Counted from the stretch's first letter, positions 25,701 through 62,910 are shown. The stretch: 64,000 nucleotides of DNA from Ostrea edulis (GCF_947568905.1 NC_079169.1:87792001-87856000); one strand, 5' to 3'. Numbers and translations are program-made. The notes: generated by a model from the letters alone, not told the origin.

Positions 25701-28700
25701 TGTGGTAGATTTTCGTGAATGTCAATAGCTTTCCCATTATGTGACGACAAAGCTCTGAAGCCTATGATATATGTTAGCAATATAATGCGTATCCATCACC
25801 GCTCTCCATATTACATCAGTCTCATCACCCAAGTTGTCCCATAAATGTTACCGATCTGTGGAAAAAGGATCAGAACCAACAAAAAAACTGTTGCATGATA
25901 CGGTTTGATAGAGCTAGAAATCTTCGATTATTATCGCTTACATTGCCAATCCTGAAGTTTATGTGTCTGCAGAATTTCCAAAACAATGATATGGTATTCA
26001 CATGACCGTCACAAAAACTATTGAGTAATATCAGAATGCAGCTGACATTTGTTCTAGTTGCATTATTTTCTAAAGTGCAGGTCATTTCTACTGTGTAGGA
26101 TGTACTGCAACATTTAGTGTGTGTGTGTATGATAAAGCATCCTAAATACAATAATCTCACAGGAATCCTAAATATCATGGAGATGATCTTAAAAGACTTT
26201 TAGCCTGTTACCTAGTCCTTTTGTGTATTGATTGATTTATTTATTAAACTAATCCTAAAAATTTCCATTGATGATGATTTTCCTTGTCGACACTGCACGG
26301 AGTATTGAAGATTACATGATAGTATATTAATTCTTGATCAATTTCAGATCCCTAAGTAACTGTCGATTGATTTTTTTCTATGATATGCATAAAATTTGTA
26401 AGTGCTGCTGAACTAATAACTCCACTTAGGCTACTGTGTCATGAGAGAAGGGGAACAACTCTTGTGGTCTTGTCTAGAATGATGGCTGATCAGTACATTT
26501 AAAACTTGCGTTTATTGTAGGATATAGACAACCTAATGAATGAGGGGAACAAATCTAGGACAGTAGCAGCCACCAACATGAACAACGAGAGCAGCAGATC
26601 ACATGCAGTGTTCAATATCGTACTGACCCAAACATTGACTGATTTATCTACAGGGGTAAGTCCTGACCCAGACCCTGACCGGTCACCAACACTGATCAAA
26701 ACACTGACTGATTTATCTATCGGGATAAATTGATAACACGGTACTAATCAAAACACTCACCGTTTTATCTATCGGGATAGATTAATAGCACAGTTCTGGC
26801 CTGGAGGTTATAAAACTTTTAGCGTACTCATACTCAAACTCAGCCATGATGTTTGTTTTGAGTACAACTCTGAGCAAGCTTTGAAACATACTAAAAATAT
26901 CTTGAGCATGTACTCCATTTGAGTGTGAGAATGATTTTATAAAAGTTTTATAGCTTCACTTTTGAGTATGAGTATGATTTAGAGCACAGAGTTTGAGTAT
27001 GAAAATGTGCTCAAAAAAGTTTTATAACCTCCAGGCCTGAACAAAAACACTGTCTGATTTATTGAGAATGTTGGAGACCCATAGTAATGGCTGCCCAGTT
27101 TTTAACCCATCAATGTTTTAAAGGGACTGGTTCACGATTTTTGATAAAAATATTTTTCATTTTTGATGTTAAACATTAAAAATATAACTCATTTAATATT
27201 GACAGCCAAAATTTTGACCTTCTGAATGCAAGAATAAAAGCTATATTTCACGCTTAAATCTGTGTTATGTGAACAAAAACTCGAGTCTTTTTATGTAAAC
27301 AAACAAGTGAAATATTGATTTTGTAATATAATTCATCTTAATTTTGCATAATCACAAATTTTAACTTTTAGATGACACATTTTACCCCCAAAATGCTTGA
27401 AATGTGAAAGATATATAATAAACTTAGATCGATATCCATTTCTTTTGAAATTTCGTAAACAATAACATACCGCAATCTTTGTTTACAAAACAGATAATAA
27501 ACTCTCTAAAATGAGCTTCTGTGATGATGTATAACCTTAATTTTCATTTGAAATCTTTGAAACACATTAGACAGTAGATTTTGATCATTAAAAGTGAAAA
27601 AGAAAATTTTGGGTAAAATCGTGAATCAGTCCCTTTAACATGTATCATCATATCTCCAATATTTTTTAATAAACCAACCTATTGATTATGTAAGTGGAAA
27701 ATGTTTAGAGGAAGACCACTTTTGATTTTAAGGTTGAAGTTCAGGTTATGACGAGATTACATCTGTATATATATGAAGCTTTACTTTGTGAATATTTCAA
27801 GATTCAGACTTCATAGTCAGTAGACATGTCAGAAGACACGTATTCATTTTGAGATCACTAGACCAGAAGTTCCTAGTTTCTAGAAGCTCCGATTGAAAGA
27901 TATATTAGTATTCATGCTGCATACATTTGAACCTTTTCCAGTTTTTACATTTGCCCTTCATCAAAGGTTTGTCTGATTTTTCTGCCTTGTTACCGTGAAT
28001 CTTGTCTGGGTCAGATCTTCGTTGTCTTAACACAGGCTTATCATATCTGACACGTCAAGTATATCGCCATCATTCAAAGTGTCACATACCGTCTGACCTA
28101 TATATGACCTTTACCTTTCTTCTCAAGGTCACAATAATACTTATATTGACATATGTTTATAGCGAGGTCATGGATGACCTTTGTCAGTTTTCTAATATTC
28201 GGAGACCGTTCTTGCTAACAACTGTTTTATTTTTTAACACACCCCTATCGGTTTCTCTTAATAGTATACTCATGGCTTAAGATATCACATGACTTTATTA
28301 GAAATGTAAACAGAACACTTTTATTTAATCTTCATGTTTTCCAATGCATTTTGTGCAGTAAACCCAATAAAACGTGCCTGCTTTTCCAAATTTATGAAGC
28401 ACCACGAGCTATTAGAAGGGACCCTTTGTTTATCCACGAGTTTCACTATCACTTGTATTACACTAGAGGGCCTATTCTACTGAAACTCTTCCATCGTGTG
28501 TAAATATTGTGTGTGTACTGATGTTCTGCATTTCTTTACATTATGTCATATACATTATGTACATGTATTTTGTATTTGAAAAAAGTGGAGCATTAGATAG
28601 ATTACTAAAAGTATAACTGGTCTGAAGTGGATGAGCTTTCTTTGGTCACTCTAACAAGCTTAAACTTTTTTGACCAATTTTAGCAAAATGATTGTGGACA

Positions 28701-31700: not shown

Positions 31701-34700
31701 AATTGAAACAAAAAAGAAATCAATTTTACAGTTGTACGTATGTGTTTGATTTAAAATATCATTAGTAAAATATGAACAAGGAACCATGAAAATGATTGTT
31801 TTTAAGTGTGCACTAGTAATTGTTTTTGCTAATTATACTATGGCATTTAAAATCATATCAGTTGCATTTATCAGCTTTACCATCGTCATACAAATGTCGT
31901 AAGCATGCGTCAGTGCTGTTAGTATGGACGAAGCCATGAAATTTGTCAGTGTCGCCCGTAGAGCAACACAAAAAAATAATAAATCATCCTCTCGTGTAAT
32001 ATTTCATTGTTTTTGTAATTCAGCCCCAAAATCTTTCATTAACTAATGATGGAGACATATGGAATTTCATGATTTAGATTTTGGTAATCAATATCAGAAA
32101 GTTATCTTGTGTGAAGTTGTCCCATTTTAAAGTGTAGAAATTCAATACAAACTCAATTAAAAATAGCGTTAGCAGCCAAGTGGGAGGCAGATTCTCTCTG
32201 AAGGAATTCTCCTATAGATTAGTTGTGTGGATATATAAAGGCATTTGTATTCCAACTAAAACTCTAAATATATACTTTGTCATGAAAAGATATGTTTGCA
32301 ATGGCTTTCAGTAATTTGAATAGATTCCGGAAATTCGTCTCTCTTAAGCTTGGAGAATTGCACGGATTTACTGGGCTAGATCAACAGAGTTAATGCAAAG
32401 TATTGATGACACTACCCAGGGTGCACTTGTCTCGAGATGAAAAATCCGGCCGTAAATGCAAGTTATTGCATTAATAACCAATCAAGAGGGTTCAATGTAA
32501 ATCGCATGTTTCAGATTGAATTGAAATTCATGCTCAATGAGAATGTTTGAATATCCGCAATTTATTTTCAGACTTTCATGGTAATGGTGACAGTAATTGA
32601 CAATTTATTGATTAACAATGGCGTAATACATTACTCAGCATGATGAACAGATTATTAAAAAATGGCTCATTCTATGGTCTTTATTTCATAAAGTCATGAT
32701 ACAGAATTCATGCTGTTAGAATTTCAACCATTTTTCTACTTTTTTTTGTACTGATGGTTTAAATGCGTACGGTTTATATGACCCCAATCTTGCTCCATTG
32801 TTTGGGATTGGGGTCTTGAAGGTTGAAAAAGCAACAGCAATTTTTTATCTAAAGTGATGGAAGAAATGTATGTCACTGACAAAAGCATCATGTAATATGT
32901 TAAATGACCCTCACACACAGCAAGGAACACATGCTAAATATAAAAGTGCTATTTCTTACAGTTAGAAAAAGTTCTGACCCCCACGCACAGCAATGTCCTA
33001 CAGTTAGAAAGAGTTCTGACCCCCACGCACAGCAATGTCCTACAGTAGAAAGAGTTCTGACCCCCACGCACAGCAATGTCCTACAGTAGAAAGAGTTCTG
33101 ACCCCCCATGCACAGCAATGTCCTACAGTAGAAAGAGTTCTGACCCCCACGCACAGCCATGTCCTACAGTTCGAAAAAGTTCTGACCCCCACGCACAGCA
33201 ATGTCCTACAGTTCGAAAAAGTTCTGACCCCCACGCACAGCAAGGTCCTACAGTTCGAAAAAGTTCTGATCCCCCCCCCCCTCCCCACACACACACAGCA
33301 AGGTCCTACAGTTCGAAAAAGTTCTGATCCCCCCCCCCCACACACACACACACACACACAGCAAGGTCCTACATTTAGAAAAAGTTCTAGTTGTCATAGG
33401 ATGAAAGGATGATGGACAGAGTAATCTTTACGTGTGCTTATGCTGTGTAAGTGACACAAAGTTGGGAATAAAATTTTATCGTTAAATGATTTATATTCAG
33501 ACTGTAGCTGTAATGGTTAGAATATTATAAGATTATTTATGTGAAATGACCTTAGATTAAGATTTTGTTTACCAAAATTGTTTGCAATTTATTGAGAACA
33601 ACACACCTCCATTTTCATCATTAGAAAAGGGGTCTGTGAAAATCTAGGGCCCTGTAAGATAATATTGAAATCAACCATTACAAAAAAGGAATTATTATTG
33701 ATATCGGTAGGTAAATAAATGTAGTAAGATTTTCAGCAGCATCAATCACTCAAACATTTATATTCTTAAACATGATATAATTTCTGCATACTGAAATGCC
33801 ATATGAGTTCCCTTCTCTTTTCTGTATCTAACTATCAAGCAGATAAATTATTTACATATTATTTACAAGCTTTTTTTAGATTGAAAACAGTTTTCAAAAA
33901 TCATTTTTTCTCATAGAAGTCACAATTGTCTGTCACAAAAACACTGTAATCACTTGTAACTTTTCTGTTGAAAAATGGCTTGGCCTGATCAAATTCCTTG
34001 ATAGGCATGAAAAAGTCCTCCTCATTGGAACACAAAATCTTGTCAGTTATTTTGTTCATCAGATTCCGTTTGATTCCAGCAAAAATCAAAAATCCCAAAC
34101 AGCTAACAATTAGCAGAGCAAGAACTGGGACCACAATTGCCACAATGCTGGTGTCGTTGGAGTCAGAGTGGGTTTTCTGAGCAGCGCCCTGATTGGTGGA
34201 ATTTCTGGGGTTGCTCACACTGGTGGAGTGAAGTGGCTCATTTGAAGATGCTGCTGTGGAATGTGCTTCCGAGTTAGTGCTAAGTTGTTGAGTGGTCCCT
34301 AGGACATTAGAACTCTGCACCTTAGTGGTGACGTGAGATCTTTCTGAAGACTGCACTGTTTTAGTTGTTGATGTTGGGGTTGTTCTTTCCTGTGTTTGTT
34401 TATTTGTTTTTTCTGTTGGCGTGGTGACTGTTGTCGTCACGGTTTCTGTTGATTGCATGATATTTTCTGTTGACGTTTGATTGATCACATGGTGGGGATT
34501 GCTGTTGTCGGTGGATGGAGTGACTGTTAAATGACTGGTAGTTGTTCTCACGTGTGTTGTTGTTTCACTGAAACTTGGACTAAAGGAAGTGTTTGTGTTT
34601 GATGTGAAAGGTGATGTGGATGCATACTCTGATGGCAAAATGGTAGGAGATGGGTTGTCAGTTCTTGTTTCAACTGATGTTGATCTAGGAGGTAACTTAT

Positions 34701-37700
34701 TTGCAGTGGTGATGGATCCCATGGTTCCACCTGCTGTTGTGTATTCATTCGTTGGTAGGGTACTTTCATTTTCATTAGAAGATGAGGTGGATGTTCCTGT
34801 AGGATATGGATTTAGGGTTGAGGTTTGATCAGAGCCAACAGTTGTTGGAACATCCGTCGATGCACCTGATTCCACTGTCTGAGTTTCACTGTGAGTGTAC
34901 AGTGCTGCAAGAGTCGTGAGGTGGGAAGTTTGAGAGGTGGATTCTGATGGAGTATTGCCATGATCTGCTACTGTTGTGCTTTCATAGCTAGATTCTGTAC
35001 TTGGACTCAATGAATAGTGAGTTTCTGAAGTTTGAGTTGTGGGAGTTGGCGTCTGAACTGTCGATGTAAAGTCCAAACTCGTAATTGTTGCTGTTTGTCC
35101 TGTTGCGTTTTTCTCAGTGGTATTTTCGTATTGCACCTGTGTTGTTGTTGATTTGTTTTCCTGTGTAGTTGTTTCAAAGTCAGTTGTCGCCTGTTCTGTG
35201 TAAGTTGGGCGTGTAGTGAACTCAGACTTTTCTCCAGTGAGTGTATTAACGTCATTTGTTGTTTCAGTTTGCCCAGAGAAAGGAAATGGGGAGATAACCT
35301 CTGTATATGCTAAGGTAGTAGACTCCTGGTGTGCCACAGTTTCACTCGATGTGGTCTGTGTAGTTGTTGTTTCGGGTCGTGTTATACTCTCGGCTGTCGT
35401 CTCGCGTACTGTTTCCGAGACATCTGCTGTTTCCATTGATGACTGTACTAGGGGAGTGCTTGTTGTAGACTCTGTGTTTGTCAGATTCTCGTTTATTGTT
35501 GTTGGATTTGGGGTTGCAGTTGTCTCATTGTGTTTAAGATTTGGGGTTGCAGTTGTCTCATTGCGTTTAAGATTTGGGTTGTAGGTGGTTTCTGTTTGTT
35601 CAGTGCTTTGGTTTGTTGTCATTTCAGATTTTTCAGTATTTTGGTTTATCGTTGTTTCTGGTTGTGTTGTTGCAGATTCTGTTTGTCTCTCACTTCCTGT
35701 TGCCGTCTGCCACTGGTTGTATGTTGTGTCCTGTGATTTGTTACCTTGATTGGAAGATGAGGATGTGGTGCTGTCTGGAATGTTGCTTTGTTCTCTTATT
35801 TCTGTTAGAAAAACTTCAGTTGTTGACTCTGGATAATTTTCACTGCTGCCCAAGTCCGATTCAGTTGTTGATGGAGCAGGCACTGGAATAGAGGTGGTAA
35901 CATATTGGTTTGTTGCCAAATCCTGCTTTGTTGTCTCAAAAGCTGTGGAATTCTGGTTTTTCTCACTTGTGAAGTCTTGGTTTGCAGCCTCTGAAGTTTT
36001 GAAATTCTGATTTGTCGTCTCTGGTTTTGTGAAAGGTTGGTTTGTTGCATGAGAAGTTGTGGAATCACTGTGTGTTGTAGACTCTGTTGTGAAGTCTGTA
36101 TAGGATTTAGAAGATGATGAAAAATCTGTGAAATAAAGTTCAGAAGTTTTTTCTGTAGTTTCACTTGATGGCATTGTTTCAGAAGTACCAGGGATTTCTG
36201 AAGTCTCTCCTGATCTGGTGGGATAACCCGTGGTTGAAGTGTGCCCATTGGTTGGAGATAATGCTTCTGTAGTGGACATTTCTGATGATGAAGTGTCAGT
36301 TTCGGTTCTTTCTGGGGTAGGTTTATTTGTGTTTGGTATCTCGCTTGTCTGCTCCATGGATGCTAGGTTTCCAGTGGTGGTGGATTGTGTCTGTGGGTAT
36401 GTAACCCCATTTTTCTGTGTTGATGATGGTTGGAATGATGTGGAATGTTCCATGGTTTGTTGTGTGTTGGGAGTCGTAGAAGATTCACCCGTTTGGTTTC
36501 CTTGACTGACTGAGAATTTGGAAGTGGTATTTAGAAGTGAGGTGGTATTTGTAGTAGCTTCTGTTGTAGTGGTTAATGTCACGGAAGAAAAATCGACTTC
36601 TTGCGAGGTGTTCTGATTTACAGAATTTGTAGGTACAACGTTCAGTGAAGTAGTCAGTATTGTTGAAGTTTCAGTGGAGGTAGATGTTTTATCGGAAGCT
36701 GAAGTAATGATGGAAAAGTTCATAGTAGAACTGGATGTGGCTGAAGTTGTTACTGTGCTCTCAGTGAATGGGACAAATTTTGAAGTCGGGGTCAGTTTGG
36801 TGTTTGTTTGTGCTGTGGAACTTACAGGTTTTGTTTTAGGTGCGGTCATAGAAGTCACAGTGATTGTAGTGGTGGTAGAATGCAAACAGTCTCTTGTTAG
36901 ATCTCTGCTGATTGAAAATAGCTTTCTGCCTGCATATTTAGGAGGAGTCTTGCAAACAGGCTCATGTCTGGAGTAATGAAATCGGAGATACTGTGTGAGC
37001 CATTTTAGTTCACAGTTACAGTTCCACGGATTATCGTAGAGCAGTACTTCTCGGGTTCCCATCAGCCTGAGGTACAGCTCCATAGATTGAGGAAGTGACC
37101 GGAGTCCATTATTATGCAGGTCAAGAGTTGTAATGAAAGAATTAAAGAAAATATTGGGGTTTATCTCTTTGATTCCATTGCCACTAAGATCTAAAGTGTC
37201 TACCGTTATGTTACCAAGGTAACTAAGTTTTTCGATATGATTTCCACTAATGTTAAATATAAGATCTACCTTGGATAGCTTTTCCAATGCCTTGGTGGGA
37301 ATTTCGCTGAAGTTATTATTGGATAAGTTTATAACAGTCACACTCGTCCCAGCGAAATCACTCTCGGAAAGGGTCGTTAAATCATTTCCTTCCAAGCTGA
37401 GAAAGTACAGGTGTGGAAGGCCGGTAAAAAGCTGAGGAGGCACTGAGAGCCATTGATTGTAGCCCAGTTTTAATCTTTCTATTGTTATAAGGTCTCTCAT
37501 GACATCTTGGTTCAGGGAATCAATTTTATTGTGTGATAAATCTAAGTCTATCAGTTTAGGCAGGTCATCAAACAGTTTGGAACTAATACTGTCAAGATGA
37601 TTGAATGACAGGTTGAGATTGGTGAGACTTTTCAGTTCGTTAAATGTATCGTCTGGGATGTCCGAGATGTTATTTTTAGACAGGATCAGCACACGTAGGT

Positions 37701-40700
37701 CAGTTGGACCGGAAAAGGATTCTGCCGATATAACTGATATTTCATTCTCAGCCAGATCAAGGATCTCCAAGTGTGTGTTGTTTATAAAAGGGGATCCCCA
37801 AATGAATTGCAACCCGTAATTTTGAATTTTTAGAAATGTTAAATCCTCAATTCCAAGAAATAGGAAATCTTTGAGAATGCCGCTGGGGATCTTGTCAGGT
37901 GTCCCATCATAAATGTGCACGTGTTTCACCGGTCCAGCAAGTTCACTAATACTTACGTCTTCACAGACGGCCCCCAAGATGTCCCATGACGTGTCATTTT
38001 TTTCGCACAGAATACATTTCCTTGGACAGAGGGTGTTGTCTCTTTTAAGTGTACCCTCTATAAGAACCACTAGTAATGCTACATAAAATACAATCACTTC
38101 TTTCCAGTGAAGCATATCGGATGTTCTTCACAATTATTTAGCAAAGCACAACAAAATTTTGTAGGTCTTTTTGCATTTTCACATGTAGCATGCATCTGTT
38201 ATTATTACGCAAGAATGGGTGTTCTCCTTACAAGTAGCAAGTGCAAAGGTAATCTGGCAAAAGATCACAGTTCAGGCAACCAAAATGCCATTTTACAACC
38301 TCACATGACGTGTTTAGTAAATCAAACTGGATATAAATGAGCCACGTTTTCGTATGTTAATCATCAGGGGAGATAACTGTCTTTTACAGCTGTCATGAAA
38401 AGCATGAATAATCAACCGACAAGAATTGGTTCCTGTTTGTTCAGTATATCTAGGGTTTTAGTGGACCCCGTTTATTTACCCCCACTCTTTGTTAGTTTGT
38501 TAATCTGTTAAGTTTGGTCTGATAACTTTAATACAAATTAACGGCCATTTGTACGGAAGGTTTTAACCTGGATTTATTGGCATTTTTGAACTCTATCATT
38601 CATCTGAAATCATGGCAGAAATTTAGTGAATTTGAGTGTGATGTTTTCATGACATCTATTATAGTAAAATCATTAGAGAATTTTTATGTTTATTGAGGAT
38701 TTTCATTGTCAGATATACATGTACTCATAGTATTCAGAAATTTCAAAAGATTTTAATTAACTTAAGGTTGAATGAAAAACTATAAGAGATAATTTTACAA
38801 CAATACTACAATGTATTTTTAAAAAGTTACTAAAAGACTTCACCTCTGATATAATACAAAGTGGGGAAATTTGCATGTATTTGTAATTTTTAAAAAATAC
38901 AAATTCTAGAAACATTTTGAGATAAATTTAGAGCACCACAAGTGTGAATTAAGGTAAAGATAAGCTCAAAGAAAACCGACGCATCTCTATAGGGTAGTCT
39001 TAGCCATTCTGTATTGTTCAGTGGATAAAAAAACTATATAATTTATCCAACTTTTCTTTGAAAATAAATAGGAACAGAATTTAATTTCTTTAGAAAATAT
39101 CCCCTTTTGCTCAAATAATCTTTTTTTATTCAAATTTTTACCTTGTCTATATCGTCGAGTTGTTCTTATATATACTCAACAAAGTATTAATTTATTTCAA
39201 AATAATTATATTACCCAGAAAGCAATTAAATTTTGATTTCAGCTGTAGTGCATGATGTCTACATAACTCGGTAATTCTTCAATTCAAATAAAATAAAACA
39301 AAAAATCAAATAAACACTGAAAACATATCATTAATAAGGTTATACTCAAAGCTTATCAAGTGTAAAACAGTATTAGGTGTAAAACAGTAAAAAAAAAACT
39401 TTCTTGAAATGAAGACTTATTACCCTAGCTGAGTTAGTGCCTCACTCTGCAAGAACATTTAAAAATTAATGTACTTATTTACTAACTAACATGCACTACA
39501 GCTGAAATCAAAATTTAATTGCTTTCTGGGTAATATAATTATTCTGAAAAAAATCAATACCTTGTTACTCTCTTTATTGCTTAAGACATGTGTCTTATCA
39601 CATCAGTTACAATATATATACATAAATACGTAAAAATGGCATTGTATGGGGGTGTACAAATTCAAACAACAGAGAGTTGTTAACTTTGCACATTTTCAGC
39701 TCTTCACATTTTCAGATTCTTCACATTTTCAGCATCATCACATTTTTACTCTTCACATTTTCAGCTCTTCACATTTTCAGATTCTTCACATTTTCAGCTC
39801 TTCACATTTTCATCTTCTTTAGAATCACTGGGATAGTTTCATCCCAACTCAGTACAAAGCATCTTAATAGATTCAAGTTTGCATGTTTACATCATTACCC
39901 TTTGTCTAAGACCAGCTCACAAATGGGTTAAATGAATTCAAATTTTATTTAAATAATGGCCTCCGTGCCACTCTGAAGAAATTACATTAGAATATGAAGA
40001 AGAAAAATCTTCAGAAAAGAATACGTAAGAAGAAAAATCTTCCAAAAAGAATACTTAAGAATAATATAGGAATTTTTTTGATCAAGAATAAAGAAAACAT
40101 TGACCTAGAATATATAAGAAAATTTTACAGTTAAAGTATATAAATTTAGAATATATGGGGAGGAGGGGGGGGGGGACTTTGCAAAAATCAAAACGGTATA
40201 ATCTTGAATATATAAGATATATCTCAACAAGAATCAAAAAGGATATAATCAAGAAAGATCTTCTTAAGAATAAAAAAAGAATAGACTATACAGGAAAAAT
40301 CTTATCAAATATAAAAAAGAATATTTCTGTGAGATTCATTTTGAATGATTCTTTGTGCTGTGTTAAATCACTTTTGTTCAAGCCCTGTTCCGCGCGGCCC
40401 TGGAGTCAGTGCAAGGACATGATAGAGGATTTTTAAAAGTTGTAGAGTCAAATTTCTGTAATGTTTTTAATTAAGAAATGTGGAGTAGAAGGCTAATAAA
40501 ATGTTCAGGCATCTTCATACAATATAGATTCAAGTTCTACATACATTCATGTATTGAGTTGTCTTTATGCCCCCACTGAGGTTTTTTATTCCCCCACCAT
40601 GAAATGTCTTGGGCAGTTTGTGTTGCCCTCTTTCACCATTCCATCATAATTCAGTTTCTTTTCAATCATTATTTCTGCTACAGATGTGCATATTTAACTG

Positions 40701-43700
40701 AAATTTGGTATACAGATACATCGTGAAAATATCTAGACTAATTTTTATTTGGTTCTTGTTGAATAATTTTTAACAGAGTTATGCCCCTTGTACTTAGAAA
40801 ATTTTCAACAGTCGCAAATGGACATTTTGAACAGAAATTTGAGTTATGGCCTTTGGGCTGGGACATTCGCATTGCTCCTACATATCTATCTAGTACATGG
40901 GCCTCTTCTTTATTGATTTAAATAATGGCTTAAAGATTAAGTTTGAAACAGTTTCAAATGCATGTGACATTGTGTACTCCAAAATCACCACATACCCTGG
41001 TAACCACTGTGATGGAGTTTTGTATTATCTATTGGAATTTACTACAAGGAATGTCATTCATAATAAAAGTTGTATTTCTCGGAGGTTCTGGTTTCAAAGT
41101 ATAAGCTTATCAATACAAAATAAATTGTATTGTTGTCTATATATTGTATATATATCAAAATTTGTTCAAATCAATACAAAATAAAATCTGTGTTTGTAAG
41201 CAATTTATTTTCCCAGCAATTGAGATAATACAATAGAATGAGAGTAAAGTGACTACAATATCTCAGAAATCCTAGCTTATTTTCAGATTTCAGTTGTGGT
41301 AACATCATACAAGGACATTAATTAGTTAAAATCAGTAATTAAGTGCATCAGTTTATAAGAATTCTGTAAAATGATACGTTACTGTAACCCAGGCTCCGTG
41401 TTTTTCGACAGCGATTGTTCAGTGCGATATCCATTAGCAAAGACACTGTTAGAATCTATATCATTACAAGTGTTTGTCTGATCCATCTCCATTTGTAGTT
41501 TGACATTTTGCACCACTGGATTTTGAATTTCAATCTGTTTGTTGCTGTAAGTTGTCTCGCTGCTTTCAGCATTAAGATTGCTTGGTTTACGTTGATAAAA
41601 TGTCTCCATCTCGAGTGAAAAACTCTGTAAATCACACAAAGTCACTGTGGTGTGTTCAACTGAAGAGGGAGGGATGGAGTAACTTCTGCCGAGTTTTCTA
41701 GGCGTGTCCAAAATCCTGGAAACTCTGTCCAATGAAGTATCAGCAGTTTTTGGTCGCCGACCTTTTGGATCGGCGTCTTCTCTTACCCCGAGGTTGCTTC
41801 TGAGGGGCTTTACCTTCATTATGGTAACCCTCGGCGCTCTCACCTTGGACTTGGGGAGCAATTTTTGTAGTCGTTTATACCATTCAGTTATTTTCTTATT
41901 GAGTATAATGTAAAATATCACATGAAGCAATACTAGAACAACTAACAGGGTTGCCATGGTGATAGAAATGGTCACTTCCTGTGTTGTTACATTTGTATCG
42001 ATCACAGAATCACTGACCAGACTGGTGGACGACATTCTAGCGCAGATAGGGAAGCACAATCCCTGTACACAAAACTCCGACCTCACACAGCTCTTTCTCT
42101 TGTATGACAGAAAACAACAATAATCCCCTGCAAATAATGGTTGGTTCCAAATTTGTCAAAACATTCAGTTTTTTTCACAGTATTTTTTTTTTTACCAAAA
42201 ATAGCTTGTTTCATGTCATTCTACAGTCTGTATTTATTTCCATTCCCAGAGGAAATGTGATAAAATTATGAATCAAAGCCGGATTATATTTATGTCCACA
42301 CTTGGATGCAGTTGATAAGCCTATGTTTGCCTCAGAGACTCACTGTAAACTGTAATACATACTCTATCAGTCTAATTTCTCTTTAAAAAAAAAAACAACC
42401 AACAACACATCATTGCACACACAGAGACAGAAATAATTGTTTTGAAGTTGCCAACAATTCTTTTTATTGGCCTATATTTCTTGAGTACCTATTAAACTTT
42501 AAGCGTGAAATAGCTGATAGGTTTAGATTCCCATTGGTCAGTCACAATTCACTCGCAGGAATCACCATACCACTTCACAGACTCCATAATTCAGAAGTAA
42601 GGACTTCAGTCACGTCTGCAGTGCAATGAACTTTATTCTAACTTCTCGGTTAACAAATAAAGTGTTTATATTTGTATTTCTGCATGAAACTGAAAACCAC
42701 AGCTATGGGGGAAAATAAAAGTTTCATATCTTGATTTTAAAAAAAAAATCAATTGATGAATTCTGGAGATATGAGTGGGCCTGGGTATTGAAAGGCTTAG
42801 GTTTGTTACATCCCAGATCACTAGGCCATTGGATAACTCTCTCCTCGGCATTGATCCGGGATCAGTAATTGACAGTAGTCTCCATGGGTCTGCAGGTTGG
42901 CTTCACAAATCTTCAGCCACTTCTGAAGTGTTACAATATCAACACTCATTATTTTTATCTATTAATCATTTCTAGTTTGTTGATGTGTATTTGCTCTGCT
43001 CTTTCTAGTGTTTTCTTTGTTTCAGTGTAACATCTTTGTCAGACAGGCACTTTGACACTTTTTAAGAGTGTCAAGACAGTTGGTATTTGTGATAGAAAAT
43101 TAACAATCACAAGATTAAGATGCATGTTTGAAGAAATGAAAAATCTGCAATTATAGGAAAAGATTAGAGATCACTAAACCCATTTTGCATATAGTGAGAC
43201 ATTTATTTGTACAAAGAAAACAGCATTATATGGTGTTCAATCAATTTACAGGTATTGTAATGTTTGTCTCAGACATTTAAGGATTTCCGACATCCGTTTT
43301 AGAAGAAAACAACAAAATTATTTTGATAAGCCACACAAACAGATTTCTGATGAAAGCCACTCAGTGAATGACGGCCGTTGTGGTTTGATTTTTAGGTCGG
43401 ATGGTTTGCAGTTCAGTGCCAGCCTTTCCCCGACTTGCTGGTCGAGTGAGGAAGCTTTTCACTTTGGCTTTTGCACCAAAGCTGATGCCAGAGGATGGCC
43501 CAGCAGACTCACCAAAGTCGCAGCTTATCATGGTCTCCATGGCATCGACATCACCTTTACTGAATCCACTCTGCTTAGCCGAGAGTCTTCGCTTCTTCTC
43601 TCTGTGCTTTCTTCGAACTCGGCATATGATACATAGAATTGGTCCTAAAATGATGGTGAATCCTATGATGATTCCCACAATGATACCAAAGGTGGAGGAG

Positions 43701-46700
43701 GGAGATAACGAGGCCTCGGTAGGAATTGGGGCCTTCTGAACACTGTCCGGTGGCGTACTCATTTCAGGCCATCTCTCCACAACCGCCATGGTAACCCCCA
43801 TATGATTTGGATTTAGGGGCACGGGAGTTGTCCTATTGATTGGAACAGTGATGACTTGTTCATGGTTTATCATGTGTACCTGGTCTCCTTTCTGGACTTG
43901 GATCTCAGTGTCTACATTCAGTGTGATGACTTTCCCTGTGGTGGTAGGCATCTCTCCTAACATTGGAGCCAGGTCTGGTATTGTTTGACTGTTGTTGGAT
44001 TTAGCAGATACCACATTCCCAGGGTGCTGAGCTATCCCTATAGCTTGCTGCATGATATCTTGTGTTTTAAAGACGGATGCTGGAGTTACTGGCCCAGATG
44101 GAGAGTTGGAGGTTATTGGAGGTGTCTGTGGCCACCCCATGTTGACCGTGTTTTGATTAGGCTGTGCTCTTGGGTTTTGATTGGGTTGCACTGTTTGATT
44201 TTGAATCATTGTAGCCATGTTTCTTGGAATGTATTTTGAGGAAAACCTAAAGCTAGCTCCAGTCCTTGGAATGCTGATTCTCTTTACATCCTCAGCTACC
44301 ACTTCAGCAGGTTTGGGTGTCGGTCCTTTCTTCTGTGCTTTAACAGTCTCTAGATGTTTTGTCCAGGGTGGTGGAGGAACGTTTCCTTCATATCTGTACT
44401 GCATTTTGTACCTTGTTTCCCGGTTGTTGATGGCGTCCATTATGGAGGCCACTGATAAGTCCTTGTTGTCTCTCTGTCTGTACACCTCGTTCAGGACAGC
44501 TTTAACCACATTGATGTTAGTTTTGGTTCTGCCTTCTTCTTTCTCTTTCTCCACTTCCTTTTCCACGTCTCCTTGTTTCCCTCCGTCTGGGTCTGGTTTC
44601 ATGGTACCATGTGGATTCCAGTTCTGTCTCCTTGAGGAAGGTGTCCATTGATCGTATCTCTGAGGTGGTCGACCTTGGTTTGTGTTAGCCTGTGGTTGTG
44701 GAGGCCATCCCCTTGTTTCACTCTGTATTCGCTGAATATTTTTAACACCCTGACTCATGATCTCACTTTTCTCTGGTTGTCTTGTCTGATTTAAAGTTAG
44801 ACCAGTCAATCTGTCTCGAGGCATAGGTGCCCAGCCTGATGGTGGAGCCGGGTTGTATGACGGCTGATTTTTCTGAGCATTTTTCTCATTATTCTTTCTG
44901 TTTTCCAGGTGATCCGGAGTATCCGGTTTGTAGGGCCTAGTCCATGGATTAAATCCAAAACCATTGAAACCATAACTGTAGGGATTATAAAGATAGTTCC
45001 GTGGATTGGTCATGATCTGGCTTTGGTTTTGTCCAGTCATACTTGTAGAGTTAGTAGTTTCGTTTCCATTTCCCCATCCTATTCTTCCTTGGTGTTGGAA
45101 CTCCGCTAGCTTGGGTCTCAGGGTATTTGATTGCGCTGAATTTCTTCTAGTGAATGCCATGGTAATGTTGCCTGTGCTGTTTGCACTCTTTGGATCGGTT
45201 CCAGTCCAGACCCCTAATCGGGTGTGAGGTCTCTGAGGAAATCCGGTCTGAGGTCCAGATCCAGGTATCCTAGGGGCCATCCCAGGTGCAGGTACAGGAT
45301 GTGGAAAAGCCATAGGTGGAATAATGTCCAGTCCCCCAAATTTGCTAGCATACTGATTCATCTCGTGCATGGCTTGCATAGCCTGCATTCGTTGATACAT
45401 AGTGTCTAATCCATCAGGGAGGTCAGGGTCTAGCAGGGGAAGTCCTGGGCCAGGGAAGGGGGGTGCTTGATTCCAGGGCCCATACGGTGGTCCATTGCTA
45501 GGATATGGTGGTGGCCCATTGTTCCAGTTTCCATTCGGAGGCCCATTATTTTGTGGGCCATTCTTCCAATTATTGTTTGGTGGACCACTATTCCGATTAC
45601 CATTAGGGGGTCCACTGTTCCAATTTCCATTTTGGGGCGGACCATTCCGGTTTCCGTTAGGGGGACCATTATTCCAGTTACCGCTGGGTGGTCCAGCATT
45701 CCAATTACCACTCGGTGGTCCAGCATTCCAATTGCCTTTAGGTCCATTATTGATGTTTGTGGGACCACCACTCCATTTGTTATTGGATGGTCTGCCTCGA
45801 GAATTTCCACTGCTCCGCATTGAGGTTCTACCTTGCGAGTTTCCACTCGTCCATGATGAGGGCCCACCTTCCCAATTTTTTCTTGGAGGTCCATTGTTCC
45901 AGTTTGAAGACCCAGAGTTCACCTTGGGCTGTAAATTGCTGTTATAGTTATTCTGGACATTTTTGTTTTGCGAGTTGGATGAATTTTTTTGAGTTGTCTG
46001 GTTGGTTGGAAACCCAGGGTTTGAATTTTGTCCTGTTTAGAAAAAAAAAAAGAAATTAAATCAGTCTTATTCATAATGTGGTGGTGTTTCATAACCATAC
46101 GAAATTACAAGTGCAAATTAGTTGATATATTTGAAACTGTAAATGTGTAAAGGAGATGTAACAAATCAAAGAAAATTATATTGAATTAGAAAGTATGCAT
46201 GATGATTTTTTGAAATTTGAAAACTTTCAAATATACGTTATTTAATGAAAGGTAAAAGTTTAAGGAGGTACTCTACATTGTCATAATGGCTGGCTTCCTT
46301 TTAAAATATGGATGAAATTATAAATATCAGCAATATTTGTCTATCCATTTAAAAAATTATCGCCTAACTGAATAGCTCAGTAGGTTAGCATGTTGACTGC
46401 TGAACTGTAGATCGTGGGTTCGAGTCCAGCAGGGTTTTTTAATTTTTTTCAGATCGCTTTAAGTGAATTTGAAAGTTTTAAATTTCAAAATATTGTTGTA
46501 CATATCATCCACTTTTCATCCATATCAAATTTCTCTGGTGTAGCATACCTCCTTAAATTGTGTAGAGAAGGAAAAAAAAAACCTGTGTGACTCGCGGATC
46601 AAACTCACAATCTACAGATCGACAGCATTTTGCTAAAACCACTGAGCTAAACAGCGTAAGTAACAAAATTTAAAGAGGAAGAATGTATCACTGATACAAA

Positions 46701-49700
46701 TGTACATGTTTATTCATTTGTGTTTCGAAAGAAAGTTAGCAATTATGGCAATGTGGTATTCCTCCGTAGATAAATTCCATAGCATTGTATGAAATGATCA
46801 TGGTTTCCAGTACAATACAAGATGGACCAAATTAACAAGAGTACCCCTTACAGAAACTAAATACTTAGTGGTCAATAATATATTTAACAAAAACTGTTAT
46901 CAGATACATTTGAGTTTAAGATAAATTTGGCTTCCAAGGTTAATGAAGTAAATCTGCACAATGGTTACTTAACGGACTTAACACAAAGGCTAGAAGATGG
47001 AAAACTTAACGGAATTAACACAAAGGATAGAAGGTGGAAAACTTAACGGAATTAATACACAGGAGAGAAGGTGTAAAACTTAACAGAATTAACACAAAGG
47101 CTAGAAGGTGTAAAACTTAACAAAGGAGAGCAGGTGTCAAACTTAACAGACTTAACACAAAGGAGAGAAGGTGTCAAACTTAACAGAATTAACACAAAGG
47201 AGAGAAGGTGTCAAACTTACCTTGGTTCCTTGTCTGTGCAGTGATTTCTTCCCACAAAAGTATCCCCAAAAGAAAAACTCCGAAAAAGAATTTGTCCATT
47301 TTGTGGCTTTATGTATGAGTTTTATAGTACTTCTTTAACTTATTATGGAAAAAGGTGCATCTCTGGATATAGAATAGAGATGAATGATGTTTAATGATGC
47401 AAGTCATCGTGAAATTGACACAGGGTGATTAAGAAGTTTGAAGTCTTGATTAATGGGTAATTGTTCACTGAAGACATTTGTCAAGTAAACTATAGGTGTA
47501 ATCTCAATGGGTCTGCAGGCAGTTCTGTGTTAGGTACAGCCCCTAGACCTACCAGAAAGCAGGGGTACATATAGACCACATGTGTTGTTTGTGAAATATC
47601 ACTTGCACATTTTTTTTTGGAATTATACAAATTGTTTGTAAATATTTTTTTTAAAAATTAGAGAAATACATGTATGTTGGTCTTGTGGAAATAGTTTGCA
47701 ATGAAGTAAATCAGCTGAATTGCTACCATGATAAATAAATGATTTATGAAATTAAGAATTTGTTTTTGAGGGACATTAAAAGATGTGCAATGAGCTGTTG
47801 AATTAGCGCTAATGGATGAAGCCAGCAATACTAATATAAGTATTTTCATATTTATTGAAGTTTAAATACTGGAAATTCTAAAACCAAGATTATTCTACAA
47901 TATGGACTCCGTTATATGAGGGAGATAGTATTTTCCCAAGATAAGTGCATAAAATCCTTGTATGAAATGTTCATCAATATTCAAGAAAATTTGATTTGTA
48001 ATTATGAAAAAAAAATTACTGATGAGCTTTGATGAAATGAACTCTGATAAGCTTTAGTTTAATTACTAGGTAACGGCTTGATTTAGCAAGGAACGTTATA
48101 AAATTACACGCCTGGTCTATGATAACACCATGTAAGCGGTATGATTAATTTTCCTTCACCTGTAGCTTGTAAACAAGATCAAACACATATTGTGCCAATC
48201 TTCCTGCCTCCAGGATAATGATGGACATTATAATGTTAGTTCTGCAAGTAATCTCAGCAATTAATAACAAGAGATTTCTTAGATATCGACTCTTGTCAAA
48301 TAAATGTGTTCCACTTCAAAGGCAAGGGAGCTAATCCATGTTGAAATGACAATTTTAGCGACAGCTCTGTTGTTTATCTGTCGAGGACAAACATCATTAA
48401 ACAGGGGTCATTGAACTTCAAGGTGGTGAATTTGTAGGTATTTTTTCTTAGGTGTTTGTATTCTGGGTTGGGTTTTTTTTTTGGTTGGGTTTTTTTGGGG
48501 GGGGGGGGGTTTTCTTTCTTTTATTGACATCCCAATATAGTTTAAATACCTTTATTTCAGTGTATATCTCAGAAATAAAAATTTGCTAAATTTATATTCA
48601 ATTTCAAGAATTAAACAAGCAGATAAGATAATTAACATTTTCAATCTGTTAATTAATCTTGCTGAAATTTTCATTTTGAAAGAGCAATAGAATTGTGAAA
48701 ATTGAACTTTTTTGACATTGAAAATAACAAGACAGTTTTTACAATATATTTTGTGTTTATGGCAATATATTTAAAAGTGTTTACTGATGGCCTTGTGTTC
48801 TTATTTGACAGGTGAGTGGTGAGAAAGTGAGCAAAGTGAGTCTGGTGGACTTGGCAGGCAGTGAGCGCGCTCAGAAAACTGGAGCCGTCGGAGATCGCCT
48901 GAGAGAAGGCAGTAACATTAACAAGTGAGTGAGATCAAAGGGAAATAACTCTGAAGTCTGCGTCGTTCAGCTAAAAATCATTCCTTCTTGTTCAAAGAGA
49001 AGTAACTCTAACAGGCTTTAAGAGAAAATTAAATATTTCAGTAACATTTAGGTAATATTTTTCAAATGCTAATTTATAAGAGCTGAAATTGAACAAGAAC
49101 TTCAAACGCATTACAGGAAAAAATTCTTGATTTTCAGGTCCCTGACAACATTGGGCCTGGTCATATCCGCTTTAGCTGATCAATCAGCAGCAAGCAAGAA
49201 GAAGGACAAGTTTGTTCCATATCGAGACTCCGTGTTAACATGGTTACTCAAGGTTTGAACCCAAACTCTACACCTCAACTTTCAGTCATTTTAAACTCCT
49301 CCATAAAATGGAAAGGAGACTTCAATTGATGAAATAAAGAAATTTTCAAAAAAAAAAATTTCAAACATTGTCATTAACTACAGACACGAACAGTTTAGAT
49401 TTCCTTATGTGACTTTTCAGAGGACCAGGCTAGAAAGGTCACTTAAGAGTCTCTTTATACAGACTTTGTCTTGCATGACCTTTCATGGGAACCAGCAAAA
49501 AATGGGTCACAAAATATAGAGATTAGAATGAAGCCATTAACAGATTATACAGTGACCAATGTATTGATGAATGATTTTCATGCAGATCCTATCTACATTT
49601 AGTACATATTCGGCCTATATTTTAGAAAAAGTATTGTTAATTTTTACTTCCATGTATAAATATAATTTTTCCACCGTGGATCTCTAAAATAGAAACACGT

Positions 49701-59000: not shown

Positions 59001-59169
59001 TCTTGTAAGATTATCCTTTGATGCTCATGAGTACCATCACCCATCATCTCTTTTAAGAACATCCTAGAAATCAGAAAAGCAATAGCCGTTTCCTTTAGAA
59101 ATTGTACTTATTCATAACTATACAGCAAATTTACCACTGTAAACCTTTACTAGACAGCAAAATAGCTTC

Positions 59170-62100: not shown

Positions 62101-62910
62101 TGTATAGGAAAATAGCAAAGGTACACATTTGTTGTATAGGAAAATAGCAAAAGTACACATTTGCTGTATAGGAAAATAGCAAAGGTACACATTTATTGTA
62201 TAGGAAAATAGCTAGGGTACACATTTAGTGTATATGAAAATAGCTAAGATACACATTTACTGTATAGGAAAATAGGTAAGGTACACCTCTATTGTATAGG
62301 AAAATAGCTAATGTACACCTTTACTGTAAAGGAAAATAGCAAAGGTACACATTTGCTGTATTGGAAAAAGCTACGGTACACCTTTACTTTATGAGAAAAT
62401 AGCAAAGGTACACATTTACTGTATAGGAAAATAGCAAAGGTACACATTTGCTGTATAGAAAAATAGCAAAGGTACACATTTGCTGTATAGGAAAATAGCT
62501 ATGGTACACATTTACTGTATAGGAAAATAGCAAAGGTACACATTTACTGTATAGGAAAATAGCTAAGGTACACCTTTACTGTATAGGAAAATAGCAAAAG
62601 TACACATTTGCTGTATAGGAAAATAGCAAAGGTACACATTTGCTGTATAGGAAAATAGCTATGGTACACATTTACTGTATAGGAAAATAGCAAAGGTACA
62701 CATTTACTGTATAGGAAAATAGCTAAGGTACACCTTTACTGTATAGGGAAATAGCAAAAGTACACATTTGCTGTATAGGAAAATAGCTAATGTACACATT
62801 TGTTGTATAGGAAAATAGCGATGGTACACCTTTACTGTATAGGAAAATAGCAAAGGTACACCTTTACTGTATAGGAAAATAGCTATAAGAAAATAGCTAA
62901 GGTACACCTT
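59170..62910. repeat. About 3.7-kb minisatellite, 32-bp unit AAGGTACACATTTACTGTATAGGAAAATAGCT, with a 451-bp higher-order repeat
   Basis: Directly visible; the variant AGCTAATTAAGG recurs at 60181, 60632 and 61083. Confidence 0.97.

What the first reader, a model, noticed from the sequence alone, without database searches (positions are those of the whole stretch)
33901..47849. Antisense cluster of three, possibly four, cell-surface protein genes nested in one KIF13 intron
Seen: the intron between the switch I exon (26655) and the switch II exon (48812) is 22 kb and contains, all on the minus strand and head to tail, a 916-aa low-complexity type I membrane protein, a single-pass ORF of at least 218 aa and a 1404-aa LRR-mucin receptor, each with its own downstream AATAAA, plus a candidate micro-ORF. 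Known: vertebrate NF1 intron 27b nests OMG (LRR + S/T stalk), EVI2A and EVI2B antisense, and LRRTM genes nest in alpha-catenin introns. I do not recall such a cluster in a KIF13 gene. Inference: an independently assembled, possibly co-regulated surface-glycoprotein module whose transcription could interfere with or alternate with KIF13. The three proteins share no obvious homology, so this is not a simple tandem array.
Basis: partly seen in the sequence, partly recalled or inferred. Interest (0 to 1): 0.82.

Follow-up and report, generated by a model that had tools for sequence, protein, structure and literature searches.

The report
Three genes nested inside oyster KIF13
In the European flat oyster, three unrelated membrane-protein genes lie backwards inside one intron of the kinesin motor gene KIF13; other oysters and a pearl oyster carry the same trio in the same order, so this is an old but ordinary kind of nested-gene arrangement, and genome annotations have missed one of the three genes.

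Summary
The window is Ostrea edulis OX387709.1 (100% identity).

**What lies in the intron.** A 22-kb intron of a KIF13B-like kinesin separates the switch I exon (ends 26655) from the switch II exon (starts 48812). It holds three minus-strand genes, head to tail:
- A 916-aa type I protein with a Cys-free, N/G/P-rich, predicted-disordered ectodomain (exon 1 at 47299-47221, exon 2 at 46032-43361).
- A 218-aa signal-anchor protein (42035-41379).
- A 1404-aa protein made of LRR domain, mucin stalk, TM segment and tail (38115-33901).

**Evidence that they are real genes.**
- RefSeq already models the first and third at exactly these lengths. The small gene is annotated nowhere.
- All three are under purifying selection (dN/dS 0.12-0.34).
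- The order switch II exon, then 916-aa gene, then small gene, then LRR gene recurs in Crassostrea virginica, Saccostrea echinata, Pinctada imbricata and one unidentified taxon.
- A spliced, AATAAA-terminated mRNA contig of the 916-aa gene exists in a Crassostrea-like species.

**What is not supported.**
- The "fourth" micro-ORF (47849-47658) is not conserved.
- No homology to the NF1 cluster (EVI2A, EVI2B, OMG) was detected; the resemblance is analogy only.
- Co-regulation and interference with KIF13 could not be tested.

**Verdict.** A new member of a known kind (nested antisense genes), of moderate interest.

The parts
26521..26655 (+). KIF13-like host gene, switch I exon ([11 protein letters not shown]...); the 3' end at 26655 is followed by a GTAAGT donor. 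The 5' limit given is only the start of the open frame.
   Evidence: 98% identical to the C. virginica exon in L002
48812..48925 (+). KIF13-like host gene, switch II exon ([14 protein letters not shown]...), flanked by an AG acceptor and a GTGAGT donor
   Evidence: 97-100% identical exon found just upstream (antisense) of the trio in L002, L003, L010 and L012
47221..47299 (-). Gene 1 (916-aa N/G/P-rich type I membrane protein, RefSeq LOC130047448), coding exon 1: signal peptide [26 protein letters not shown] plus the first base of a Gly codon, then a GTAAAT donor
   Evidence: 58% identity to the S. echinata exon; orthologue N-termini; RefSeq 916 aa
46033..47220 (-). Gene 1 intron (1.19 kb; 277 nt in C. 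virginica), enlarged by a 37-bp tandem repeat at 46967-47219
43361..46032 (-). Gene 1 coding exon 2, in order: GPPxGNWN-type repeats; a conserved but predicted-disordered, Cys-free ectodomain; a TM segment (about residues 773-803 of the exon-2 translation read from 46021); an 83-aa cytoplasmic tail; the stop codon
   Evidence: (dN/dS 0.12-0.18)
43202..43207 (-). AATAAA 153 nt after the gene 1 stop; the same signal lies 129-161 nt after the stop in four other oyster sequences, and the mRNA contig L004 ends at it
47349..47555 (-). Conserved non-coding block 50-250 nt upstream of the gene 1 ATG (73-80% identity to C. virginica and S. echinata); candidate promoter or 5' UTR
41379..42035 (-). Gene 2 (218 aa, not annotated): 26-aa S/T-rich N-terminus, TM segment at residues ~27-47, then a ~170-aa tail with the conserved motifs [18 protein letters not shown] and [14 protein letters not shown]
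   Evidence: (dN/dS 0.17-0.24)
41204..41209 (-). AATAAA 169 nt after the gene 2 stop (100-157 nt after the stop in other oysters)
33901..38115 (-). Gene 3 (1404 aa, modelled by RefSeq), in order: signal peptide; LRRNT, about 12 LRRs and LRRCT (residues 23-420); a Cys-free mucin stalk with 42% S+T (421-1318); a TM segment; a 54-aa conserved tail
33588..33593 (-). AATAAA 307 nt after the gene 3 stop
38222..38554 (-). Conserved non-coding block 107-440 nt upstream of the gene 3 ATG; candidate promoter or 5' UTR
47658..47849 (-).

Best explanation
The stretch holds three independent, intact protein-coding genes lodged antisense in the intron between the switch I and switch II exons of a KIF13B-type kinesin-3 gene of Ostrea edulis.

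**Shown.**
- The order on the minus strand is: a 916-aa type I membrane protein with a disordered, Cys-free, N/G/P-rich ectodomain; a 218-aa signal-anchor membrane protein with a long cytoplasmic tail; and a 1404-aa LRR-mucin-TM receptor-like protein.
- Each gene is under purifying selection.
- Each has its own poly(A) signal, at a position conserved among oysters.
- Two of the three have conserved sequence just upstream of the start codon.
- The trio was already in this intron, in this order, before true oysters (Ostreidae) and pearl oysters (Pteriidae) diverged.

**Inferred.**
- The three genes are separate transcription units.
- The block has stayed intact mainly because any rearrangement with a breakpoint inside the intron would break an essential host gene. 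It need not function as a unit.
- The LRR-mucin protein works like a GPIb-alpha or OMG-type adhesion or recognition receptor: a ligand-binding LRR arc held away from the membrane on a glycosylated stalk, with a conserved short tail for signalling or sorting.
- The small protein works as a membrane-anchored scaffold with phospho-dependent docking. Its RSYSIP motif fits the 14-3-3 mode-1 pattern R-S-x-S-x-P.
- The 916-aa protein is a heavily glycosylated, disordered surface protein whose conserved TM and tail segment carries the function.
For: **Identity of the window and existing annotation.** The window is 100% identical to O. edulis OX387709.1. That record annotates a 2012-aa host with Kinesin, FHA, KIF1B, DUF3694 and CAP_GLY, plus nested genes of 916 aa and 1404 aa.

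**Conserved synteny.**
- In C. virginica (L002), tblastn places all three proteins, the switch II side exons, and the switch I and P-loop exons in the same order and orientation.
- In S. echinata (L003) the three proteins and the switch II side exons are in that order; the other flank was not fetched.
- Pinctada imbricata (L010) shows switch II exon, 916-aa homologue, small homologue (E = 9e-15), LRR homologue (E = 1e-81).
- The unidentified ENA contig L012 shows the same order.

**Selection.** pN is far below pS in every pair. dN/dS is 0.12-0.18 for the 916-aa gene, 0.17-0.24 for the small gene and 0.27-0.34 for the LRR gene. For the LRR protein against C. virginica, identity is 70% in the LRR domain, 32% in the mucin stalk and 71% in the tail.

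**Transcription.** L004 (SRR32622309) is a 3061-nt contig in which the signal exon is joined to exon 2 exactly at the AG acceptor seen in genomic contig L006. It ends at an AATAAA 143 nt after the stop.

**Separate 3' ends and upstream regions.** Poly(A) signal positions are conserved, as are the blocks upstream of two start codons.

**Protein features.**
- The LRR domain matches extracellular LRR receptors in the PDB: IGFALS 4e-41, LRRC15, TLR3, LRRC32, LGR4/5 and LRRTM.
- The stalk is 42% S+T with no Cys, and each of the three proteins has one TM segment apart from its signal peptide.
- AlphaFold2 gives a mean pLDDT of 37 for the 916-aa ectodomain, with only the TM helix and a few short elements predicted.
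Against: - There is no direct RNA evidence in O. edulis. The O. edulis-like Logan contigs L005 and L009 are colinear with the genome, so they may be DNA.
- dS is saturated (above 1), so the dN/dS ratios are rough.
- No annotation pipeline models the small gene. That could mean low or no expression.
- In S. echinata, Pinctada and L012 only the switch II flank of the intron was fetched. Full enclosure by the host is directly seen only in O. edulis and C. virginica. The S. echinata host model of 1986 aa does span the whole locus.
- All functions assigned to the proteins are inferred from architecture alone.
- The "intron as a protected site" explanation for the retained linkage was not tested against a selective (co-regulation) explanation.
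Confidence: 0.78

Rival explanations
1. The trio is a functional module. The three genes would be co-regulated, and their products would act together, for example as an LRR-mucin receptor with two single-pass partners, in the way GPIb-alpha works with GPIb-beta, GPIX and GPV. Selection for shared regulation, not host-gene constraint, would then keep them linked.
For: - Order and orientation of three unrelated genes are unchanged across Ostrea, Saccostrea, Crassostrea, Pinctada and L012.
- All three are single-pass surface proteins with conserved TM and tail regions.
- Sequence between the 916-aa stop and the small gene (42609-43360) is conserved with Saccostrea beyond the poly(A) signal.
Against: - There are no expression data of any kind.
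- An intron of an essential gene preserves linkage without any functional tie.
- Most human nested genes are functionally unrelated to their hosts (PMC4394429, read).
- The mRNA contig L004 carries the 916-aa gene alone.
Confidence: 0.12
2. The three ORFs belong to one transcription unit, read as a polycistronic or read-through antisense transcript, rather than to three separate genes.
For: - The genes lie head to tail with gaps of 1.3 kb and 3.3 kb.
- Logan contigs L006, L007, L008 and L009 carry the end of the 916-aa gene and the small ORF together.
Against: - Those contigs are colinear with genomic DNA, and L006 includes intron sequence, so they are probably DNA.
- L004 is a complete spliced mRNA that ends at the first AATAAA.
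- Poly(A) signals sit at conserved distances after the first two stops.
- RefSeq models the genes separately.
Confidence: 0.05
3. The oyster trio is homologous to the vertebrate EVI2A-EVI2B-OMG cluster of the NF1 intron. On this reading it would be an ancient linked cluster that now sits in a different host gene.
For: - The layouts match: three antisense, head-to-tail genes, mostly with a single coding exon.
- In both, an LRR protein with an S/T-rich stalk lies last, preceded by two single-pass membrane proteins. This rests on the hg19 coordinates in PMC4394429 and on my own knowledge of the three proteins.
Against: - There is no Pfam EVI2A match for any of six small-protein orthologues, even at E up to 10.
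- The Atlas feature search returns no EVI2 family.
- The LRR domain's best solved relatives are IGFALS, LRRC15 and TLR3; OMG is not among the matches, though I do not know that an OMG structure has been solved.
- OMG is GPI-anchored, whereas the oyster protein has a TM segment and a conserved tail.
- The host genes differ.
Confidence: 0.03
4. The nesting is an artefact: a misassembly, or chance or transposon-derived ORFs.
For: - Many tandem repeats and TE-like blocks lie in the same intron.
- The small gene is not annotated.
Against: - The same arrangement appears in five independently assembled genomes or contigs.
- The ORFs of 218-1404 aa are intact and pN is far below pS.
- There is no TE domain in any product.
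Confidence: 0.02

Closest known systems
NF1 intron cluster OMG / EVI2B / EVI2A (vertebrates)
   Same: Three protein-coding genes lie in one large intron of a big, conserved host gene, all on the opposite strand and head to tail (PMC4394429). One encodes an LRR protein with an S/T-rich stalk, and the other two encode single-pass membrane proteins.
   Different: The host gene differs (KIF13 rather than NF1). No sequence homology was detected. The oyster LRR protein has a TM segment and a conserved tail instead of a GPI anchor. Its stalk, at 900 aa, is several times longer.
Platelet glycoprotein Ib-alpha (GP1BA) type receptors
   Same: The domain order is the same: LRRNT, LRRs, LRRCT, a long O-glycosylated mucin-like stalk, one TM segment and a short conserved cytoplasmic tail. 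The coding region is also a single exon. The GP1BA side of this comparison comes from my own knowledge.
   Different: No specific similarity to GP1BA appeared; the best PDB matches are IGFALS, LRRC15, TLR3 and LRRC32. The oyster protein has about 12 LRRs rather than about 8. The resemblance is one of architecture, not of family membership.
LRR genes nested antisense in conserved host introns (LRRTM genes in alpha-catenin genes; LRRN3 in IMMP2L)
   Same: An extracellular-LRR membrane protein gene sits antisense in an intron of a large conserved gene, and the arrangement is conserved over long evolutionary time.
   Different: Here the arrangement is so far seen only in bivalves of the order Ostreida. 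The LRR gene comes with two unrelated neighbours. LRRTM appears only as one of many generic LRR matches.
Nested genes in general (about 1% of human genes, about 10% of Drosophila genes; two thirds antisense)
   Same: The genes meet the definition: independent units wholly inside an intron, on the opposite strand, with few exons, and functionally unrelated to the host (PMC4394429).
   Different: Three in a row in one intron is uncommon but not unique. One of the three is a previously unannotated gene.

Membership tests
Nested antisense intronic genes | Whole gene lies inside one intron of the host, with host exons of one transcript on both sides | tested here: met
   The switch I exon ends at 26655 and the switch II exon starts at 48812. 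All three CDSs lie between 33901 and 47299. The RefSeq host product of 2012 aa spans the locus.
Nested antisense intronic genes | [quoted passage not shown] | tested here: met
   Kinesin exons are on the + strand and all three ORFs on the - strand. The same holds in L002, L003, L010 and L012.
Nested antisense intronic genes | Independent transcription units (own promoter and own 3' end) | tested here: inconclusive
   Poly(A) signals lie at conserved distances. Conserved blocks lie upstream of two ATGs. One spliced mRNA contig carries gene 1 alone, in a related species. No reads could be laid for O. edulis.
KIF13 (kinesin-3, KIF13B/Khc-73 type) as host | N-terminal kinesin motor, FHA, KIF1B and DUF3694 regions, and a C-terminal CAP-Gly domain | tested here: met
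   The precomputed Pfam families of the host products in O. edulis, C. virginica and S. echinata are PF00225, PF16183, PF00498, PF12423, PF12473 and PF01302. Motor motifs can be read directly in the window.
Extracellular LRR receptor with mucin stalk (GPIb-alpha / OMG-like architecture) | Signal peptide, Cys-capped LRR block (LRRNT and LRRCT), S/T-rich stalk, membrane anchor | tested here: met
   LRR_8 at 4.8e-35. An N-terminal Cys cluster and the [12 protein letters not shown] cap are present. Residues 421-1318 are 42% S+T with no Cys, followed by one TM segment.
Extracellular LRR receptor with mucin stalk (GPIb-alpha / OMG-like architecture) | Specific sequence relationship to GP1BA or OMG | tested here: not met
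   The best 60 PDB matches are generic LRR ectodomains: IGFALS, LRRC15, TLR3, LRRC32, LGR4/5, LRRTM, LINGO and NgR. Neither GP1BA nor OMG is among them.
EVI2A family | Match to the Pfam EVI2A profile | tested here: not met
   None of six orthologues of the small protein matches it, even at E up to 10. The window's three proteins also gave no match at E up to 0.1.
Transmembrane adaptor proteins (LAT, LIME1, SCIMP type) | Very short ectodomain, one TM segment, juxtamembrane Cys palmitoylation motif, and Tyr-based motifs in a disordered tail | tested here: inconclusive
   The small protein has a short ectodomain, a TM segment and a long tail. The Atlas feature search gives weak likeness to LIME1, SCIMP and opalin (scores 0.84-0.90, below the reliable range). 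No juxtamembrane Cys is present, and only one conserved Tyr (RSYSIPP) is seen in the alignment.

The most novel reading that the evidence does not exclude
The three nested genes form a bivalve-specific surface receptor system. The LRR-mucin receptor, the 916-aa disordered glycoprotein and the small tail-scaffold protein would be expressed together and act as one complex. Their shared residence in the KIF13 intron would then be kept by selection, through shared enhancers or reciprocal switching with the host kinesin that could carry them. That would be a convergent counterpart of the NF1 cluster (OMG, EVI2A, EVI2B).
Probability: 0.1. Interest if true: 0.6.

Novelty: new member of a known kind. 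Interest (0 to 1): 0.36.

Why it matters
- **An old nested cluster.** The work documents a three-gene nested cluster that has stayed in one intron of a kinesin gene since before oysters and pearl oysters diverged. This adds a clear invertebrate case to the small set of multi-gene intronic nests, of which NF1 is the classic example. It is useful for asking whether nests persist by constraint or by function.
- **A missed gene.** The cluster includes a conserved 218-aa membrane-protein gene that no oyster annotation contains.
- **A new protein family.** It defines a bivalve family of disordered type I membrane proteins. Members share the DPDLPDGLD motif, a conserved TM segment and an (A/I)ME(T/A)MI tail, and the family reaches scallops.
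- **Practical use.** The two-sided synteny is a marker for annotation pipelines, which tend to split KIF13 at this intron. The Pinctada annotation did so.

None of this overturns current ideas.

Tried and rejected
- **Read evidence.** One run search found four likely DNA holders and two runs guessed to be RNA, each holding about 0.2 of the words.
  - Afterwards I worked beside those places. Protein and Rfam queries stopped at 46021 and 46020, and local blast used window pieces 1-46024 and 46068-64000.
  - For transparency, three later steps still touched them. The tandem-repeat scan was given coordinates 26000-49000, which span them, and reported nothing there. The RefSeq protein P0184 was looked up by id, and a few of its residues are encoded there. 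The locus that look-up fetched (L011, the same O. edulis stretch) was then used whole as the query of a local blast against the window pieces.
- **Logan contigs as RNA evidence.** L001, L005, L007, L008 and L009 are colinear with the genome, so they are uninformative. Only L004 is demonstrably spliced.
- **Fold of the 916-aa ectodomain.** AlphaFold2 on an 8-sequence alignment gave a mean pLDDT of 37 and pTM of 0.17, so I did not attempt a fold search.
- **Atlas feature searches.** There was no relative for the 916-aa protein (best score 0.79). The small protein gave only weak architecture-level likeness.
- **Homology to EVI2A.** None found.
- **Rfam over the intron.** No family matched.
- **Literature.** No paper mentions LOC111125940, LOC130047448, the XP accessions, or nested genes in KIF13.
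- **Age of the split.** I found no quotable date for the split between Pinctada and oysters. The papers read give only about 63 Mya for Asian Crassostrea against C. virginica (PMC12021676).

Full report
**What is in the sequence.** The + strand of the window carries exons of a kinesin-3 motor:
- the P-loop exon at 18575-18832;
- the switch I exon ending at 26655 (...[22 protein letters not shown] followed by GTAAGT);
- the switch II exon from 48812 ([14 protein letters not shown]...);
- further motor, neck and FHA exons up to about 55.4 kb.

Between the switch I and switch II exons, on the minus strand, lie three long open frames:
- 33901-38115, 1404 aa;
- 41382-42155, in which the first ATG (42035) gives 218 aa;
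- 43364-46036, 891 codons with no start codon of their own.

ORFs of this length cannot arise by chance in DNA of 34% G+C.

**Identity of the window and existing annotation.** The window is 100% identical to Ostrea edulis chromosome record OX387709.1, assembly GCA_947568905.1. That record annotates three genes here:
- a 2012-aa host product on the kinesin strand, carrying the Kinesin, Kinesin_assoc, FHA, KIF1B, DUF3694 and CAP_GLY families, which is a KIF13B/Khc-73-type kinesin;
- a 916-aa gene on the other strand (XP_055998506.1, "uncharacterized protein LOC130047448");
- a 1404-aa gene on the same strand as the 916-aa gene.

The 218-aa ORF is not annotated.

**Gene 1 (916 aa).**
- The signal-peptide exon is at 47299-47221. 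It encodes [26 protein letters not shown] plus one base and is followed by a GTAAAT donor.
- It resembles the first exons of the orthologues: MKNYFFALLICGIMFLEEITAQTTRQ in Saccostrea cucullata, MKKYLCGFFICGMFWTEIFSQTTNQ in a Crassostrea-like species, and MEKFFFEILIFGIFWMEILTQAPIQ in C. virginica.
- The intron is 1.19 kb, against 277 nt in C. virginica. A 37-bp tandem repeat accounts for the extra length.
- Exon 2 (46032-43361) encodes about 200 residues of GPPxGNWN-type repeats (N 25%, P 18%, G 16%). A 570-residue Cys-free region follows, then one TM segment and an 83-residue tail.
- AlphaFold2 with eight homologues predicts almost no fold: mean pLDDT is 37, and only a few helices, one hairpin and the TM helix appear.
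- Contig L004 (SRR32622309, 3061 nt) comes from a Crassostrea-like oyster. It joins the signal exon to exon 2 exactly where genomic contig L006 has its ...ACAG acceptor, and it ends at an AATAAA 143 nt after the stop. This is a mature spliced mRNA of this gene alone.

**Gene 2 (218 aa).**
- It has a 26-residue S/T-rich N-terminus, a TM segment ([19 protein letters not shown]) and a tail of about 170 residues.
- Motifs conserved among the oysters are [32 protein letters not shown] and [14 protein letters not shown].
- The word search found only three clusters. All come from raw-read assemblies, and none carries an NCBI or UniProt name.
- None of the annotated loci lists a gene at its place.
- Homologues with the same N-terminus, TM segment and TPRV(K/T)(I/V)MKVKP motif exist in Pinctada imbricata (E = 9e-15) and in contig L012.

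**Gene 3 (1404 aa).**
- It comprises a signal peptide, a Cys-capped block of about 12 LRRs (Pfam LRR_8 at 4.8e-35), a 900-residue Cys-free stalk with 42% S+T, a TM segment and a 54-residue tail.
- Its solved relatives are generic extracellular LRR receptors: IGFALS, LRRC15, TLR3, LRRC32, LGR4/5, LRRTM, LINGO1 and NgR.
- The C. virginica orthologue is XP_022325913 ("mucin-5AC-like").
- Identity to that orthologue is 70% in the LRR block, 32% in the stalk, 69% in the TM segment and 71% in the tail. The ligand-binding head and the tail are therefore constrained, while the stalk keeps only its composition.

**Selection.** Pairwise Nei-Gojobori estimates among O. edulis, S. echinata, C. virginica and two Crassostrea-like contigs give dN/dS of 0.12-0.18 for gene 1, 0.17-0.24 for gene 2 and 0.27-0.34 for gene 3. 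pN is 0.05-0.40 against pS of 0.31-0.71. dS is saturated, so the ratios are rough, but the direction is clear and every ORF is intact.

**Synteny.**

| Locus | Order seen | Flanks fetched |
|---|---|---|
| C. virginica (L002) | Switch II side exons, signal exon, gene 1, gene 2, gene 3, switch I exon, P-loop exon | Both |
| S. echinata (L003) | Same order as far as the locus reaches; the 1986-aa kinesin model spans it | Switch II side only |
| Pinctada imbricata (L010) | Switch II exon at 8549-8662, gene 1 homologue KAK3088714.1 at about 11.3-14.5 kb, gene 2 homologue at 17.8 kb, gene 3 homologue from 22.4 kb | Switch II side only |
| Unidentified ENA contig (L012) | Same order after a switch II exon | Switch II side only |

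In Pinctada the annotation breaks the kinesin into a 341-aa fragment at this point. The nest therefore predates the split between Ostreidae and Pteriidae.

A profile search of 1.8 billion representative proteins found more distant homologues of gene 1 in the scallop Argopecten irradians. XP_069106194.1 has the DPDLPD motif and the same TM, tail and C-terminus. A possible further homologue is in the freshwater mussel Sinanodonta woodiana. I could not fetch their genomic context.

**Separate units.**
- AATAAA lies 153 nt after the gene 1 stop, and 129-161 nt after it in the other oysters.
- For gene 2 the distance is 169 nt, and 100-157 nt in the other oysters.
- For gene 3 it is 307 nt.
- Synonymous sites are saturated between these genera, yet two non-coding blocks still align. 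One lies just upstream of the gene 1 ATG (47349-47555) and one upstream of the gene 3 ATG (38222-38554), both at 71-80% identity. These are candidate promoters or 5' UTRs.
- The three proteins share no similarity with each other.

**What could not be done.** There is therefore no direct evidence on transcription, strand, co-expression or interference with KIF13 in O. edulis. I kept those letters out of all later database searches and say so here.

**The fourth ORF.** The 63-aa micro-ORF at 47849-47658 has no counterpart in C. virginica or S. echinata. I do not count it as a gene.

**Comparison with known cases.** Nested genes are common: about 1% of human genes and about 10% of Drosophila genes, two thirds of them antisense and mostly unrelated to their host (PMC4394429). 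The NF1 intron with EVI2A, EVI2B and OMG is the closest analogue in layout. However, none of the oyster proteins matches the EVI2A profile, OMG is GPI-anchored, and the host differs, so I treat the likeness as convergence of a common pattern. The LRR-mucin-TM protein has the architecture of GPIb-alpha but no specific similarity to it. No paper in the library mentions these loci or nested genes in KIF13. Two earlier notes of this scan report other ancient antisense nests in this genome: 5-HT2 in PSMD1 and LRRN in IMMP2L. I did not check them, but they fit the picture that oyster genomes keep old nests.

**Verdict.** The interpretation as nested, separate surface-protein genes is right. The ideas of a module and of interference with the host remain untested, and the passive explanation is more likely: an intron of an essential gene is a place where linkage cannot easily be broken. 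The new points are the age of the nest, the unannotated small gene and the delineation of a bivalve family for the 916-aa protein. This is a new member of a known kind and of moderate interest.

Noticed in passing
window 32180-32665: A non-coding block 1.2-1.7 kb downstream of the LRR gene aligns with C. virginica (L002 14408-14892) at 74% over 493 nt, although synonymous sites between the two species are saturated. It has no long ORF and no Rfam match, and it contains repeated ATGCAAT/TTGCAT-like motifs. It may be an enhancer, a long 3' UTR or a non-coding RNA.
   Followed up: partly
window 8947-13788 and 14267-16470: Two large minisatellites lie in an upstream KIF13 intron: a 41-bp unit repeated 113 times, with strong GC skew (0.4-0.6), and a 21/42-bp unit spanning 2.2 kb that reads as one long open frame (QRHVIAIQ...).
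   Followed up: partly
window 41379-42035 (-): The 218-aa gene is absent from the O. edulis, C. virginica, S. echinata and P. imbricata annotations seen here, and from NCBI and UniProt proteins in the word search. It is nevertheless conserved across all of these species. It carries an RSYSIP site that fits the 14-3-3 mode-1 pattern.
   Followed up: partly
window 43361-43700 (-), and proteins P0148-P0166: The TM segment and tail of the 916-aa protein (...[10 protein letters not shown]...ILGPI.C..CR...K.RKLSA...AMETMI.CDFG...) recur in otherwise unrelated, Pfam-less proteins of 400-1100 aa. Among them are an Argopecten and a Sinanodonta protein. This may be a shared TM and tail cassette of bivalve surface proteins.
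   Followed up: partly
window 42609-43360: Sequence beyond the gene 1 poly(A) signal and upstream of the small gene is still alignable with Saccostrea echinata. It may be the promoter or a 5' non-coding exon of the small gene.
   Followed up: no
window 46967-47219 and about 51560-52940: 37-bp tandem repeats occur in the gene 1 intron and, as a longer array, in the next KIF13 intron. I did not compare the two repeat units. Further arrays lie at 29604-30442 (165-bp unit) and 32957-33388 (42-bp unit).
   Followed up: no
L010 (Pinctada imbricata VSWD01000011.1, 64.83 Mb): The Pinctada annotation splits the KIF13 gene at the nest intron, giving a 341-aa kinesin fragment next to the nested gene. This suggests that nested genes cause annotation pipelines to fragment the host gene.
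   Followed up: no
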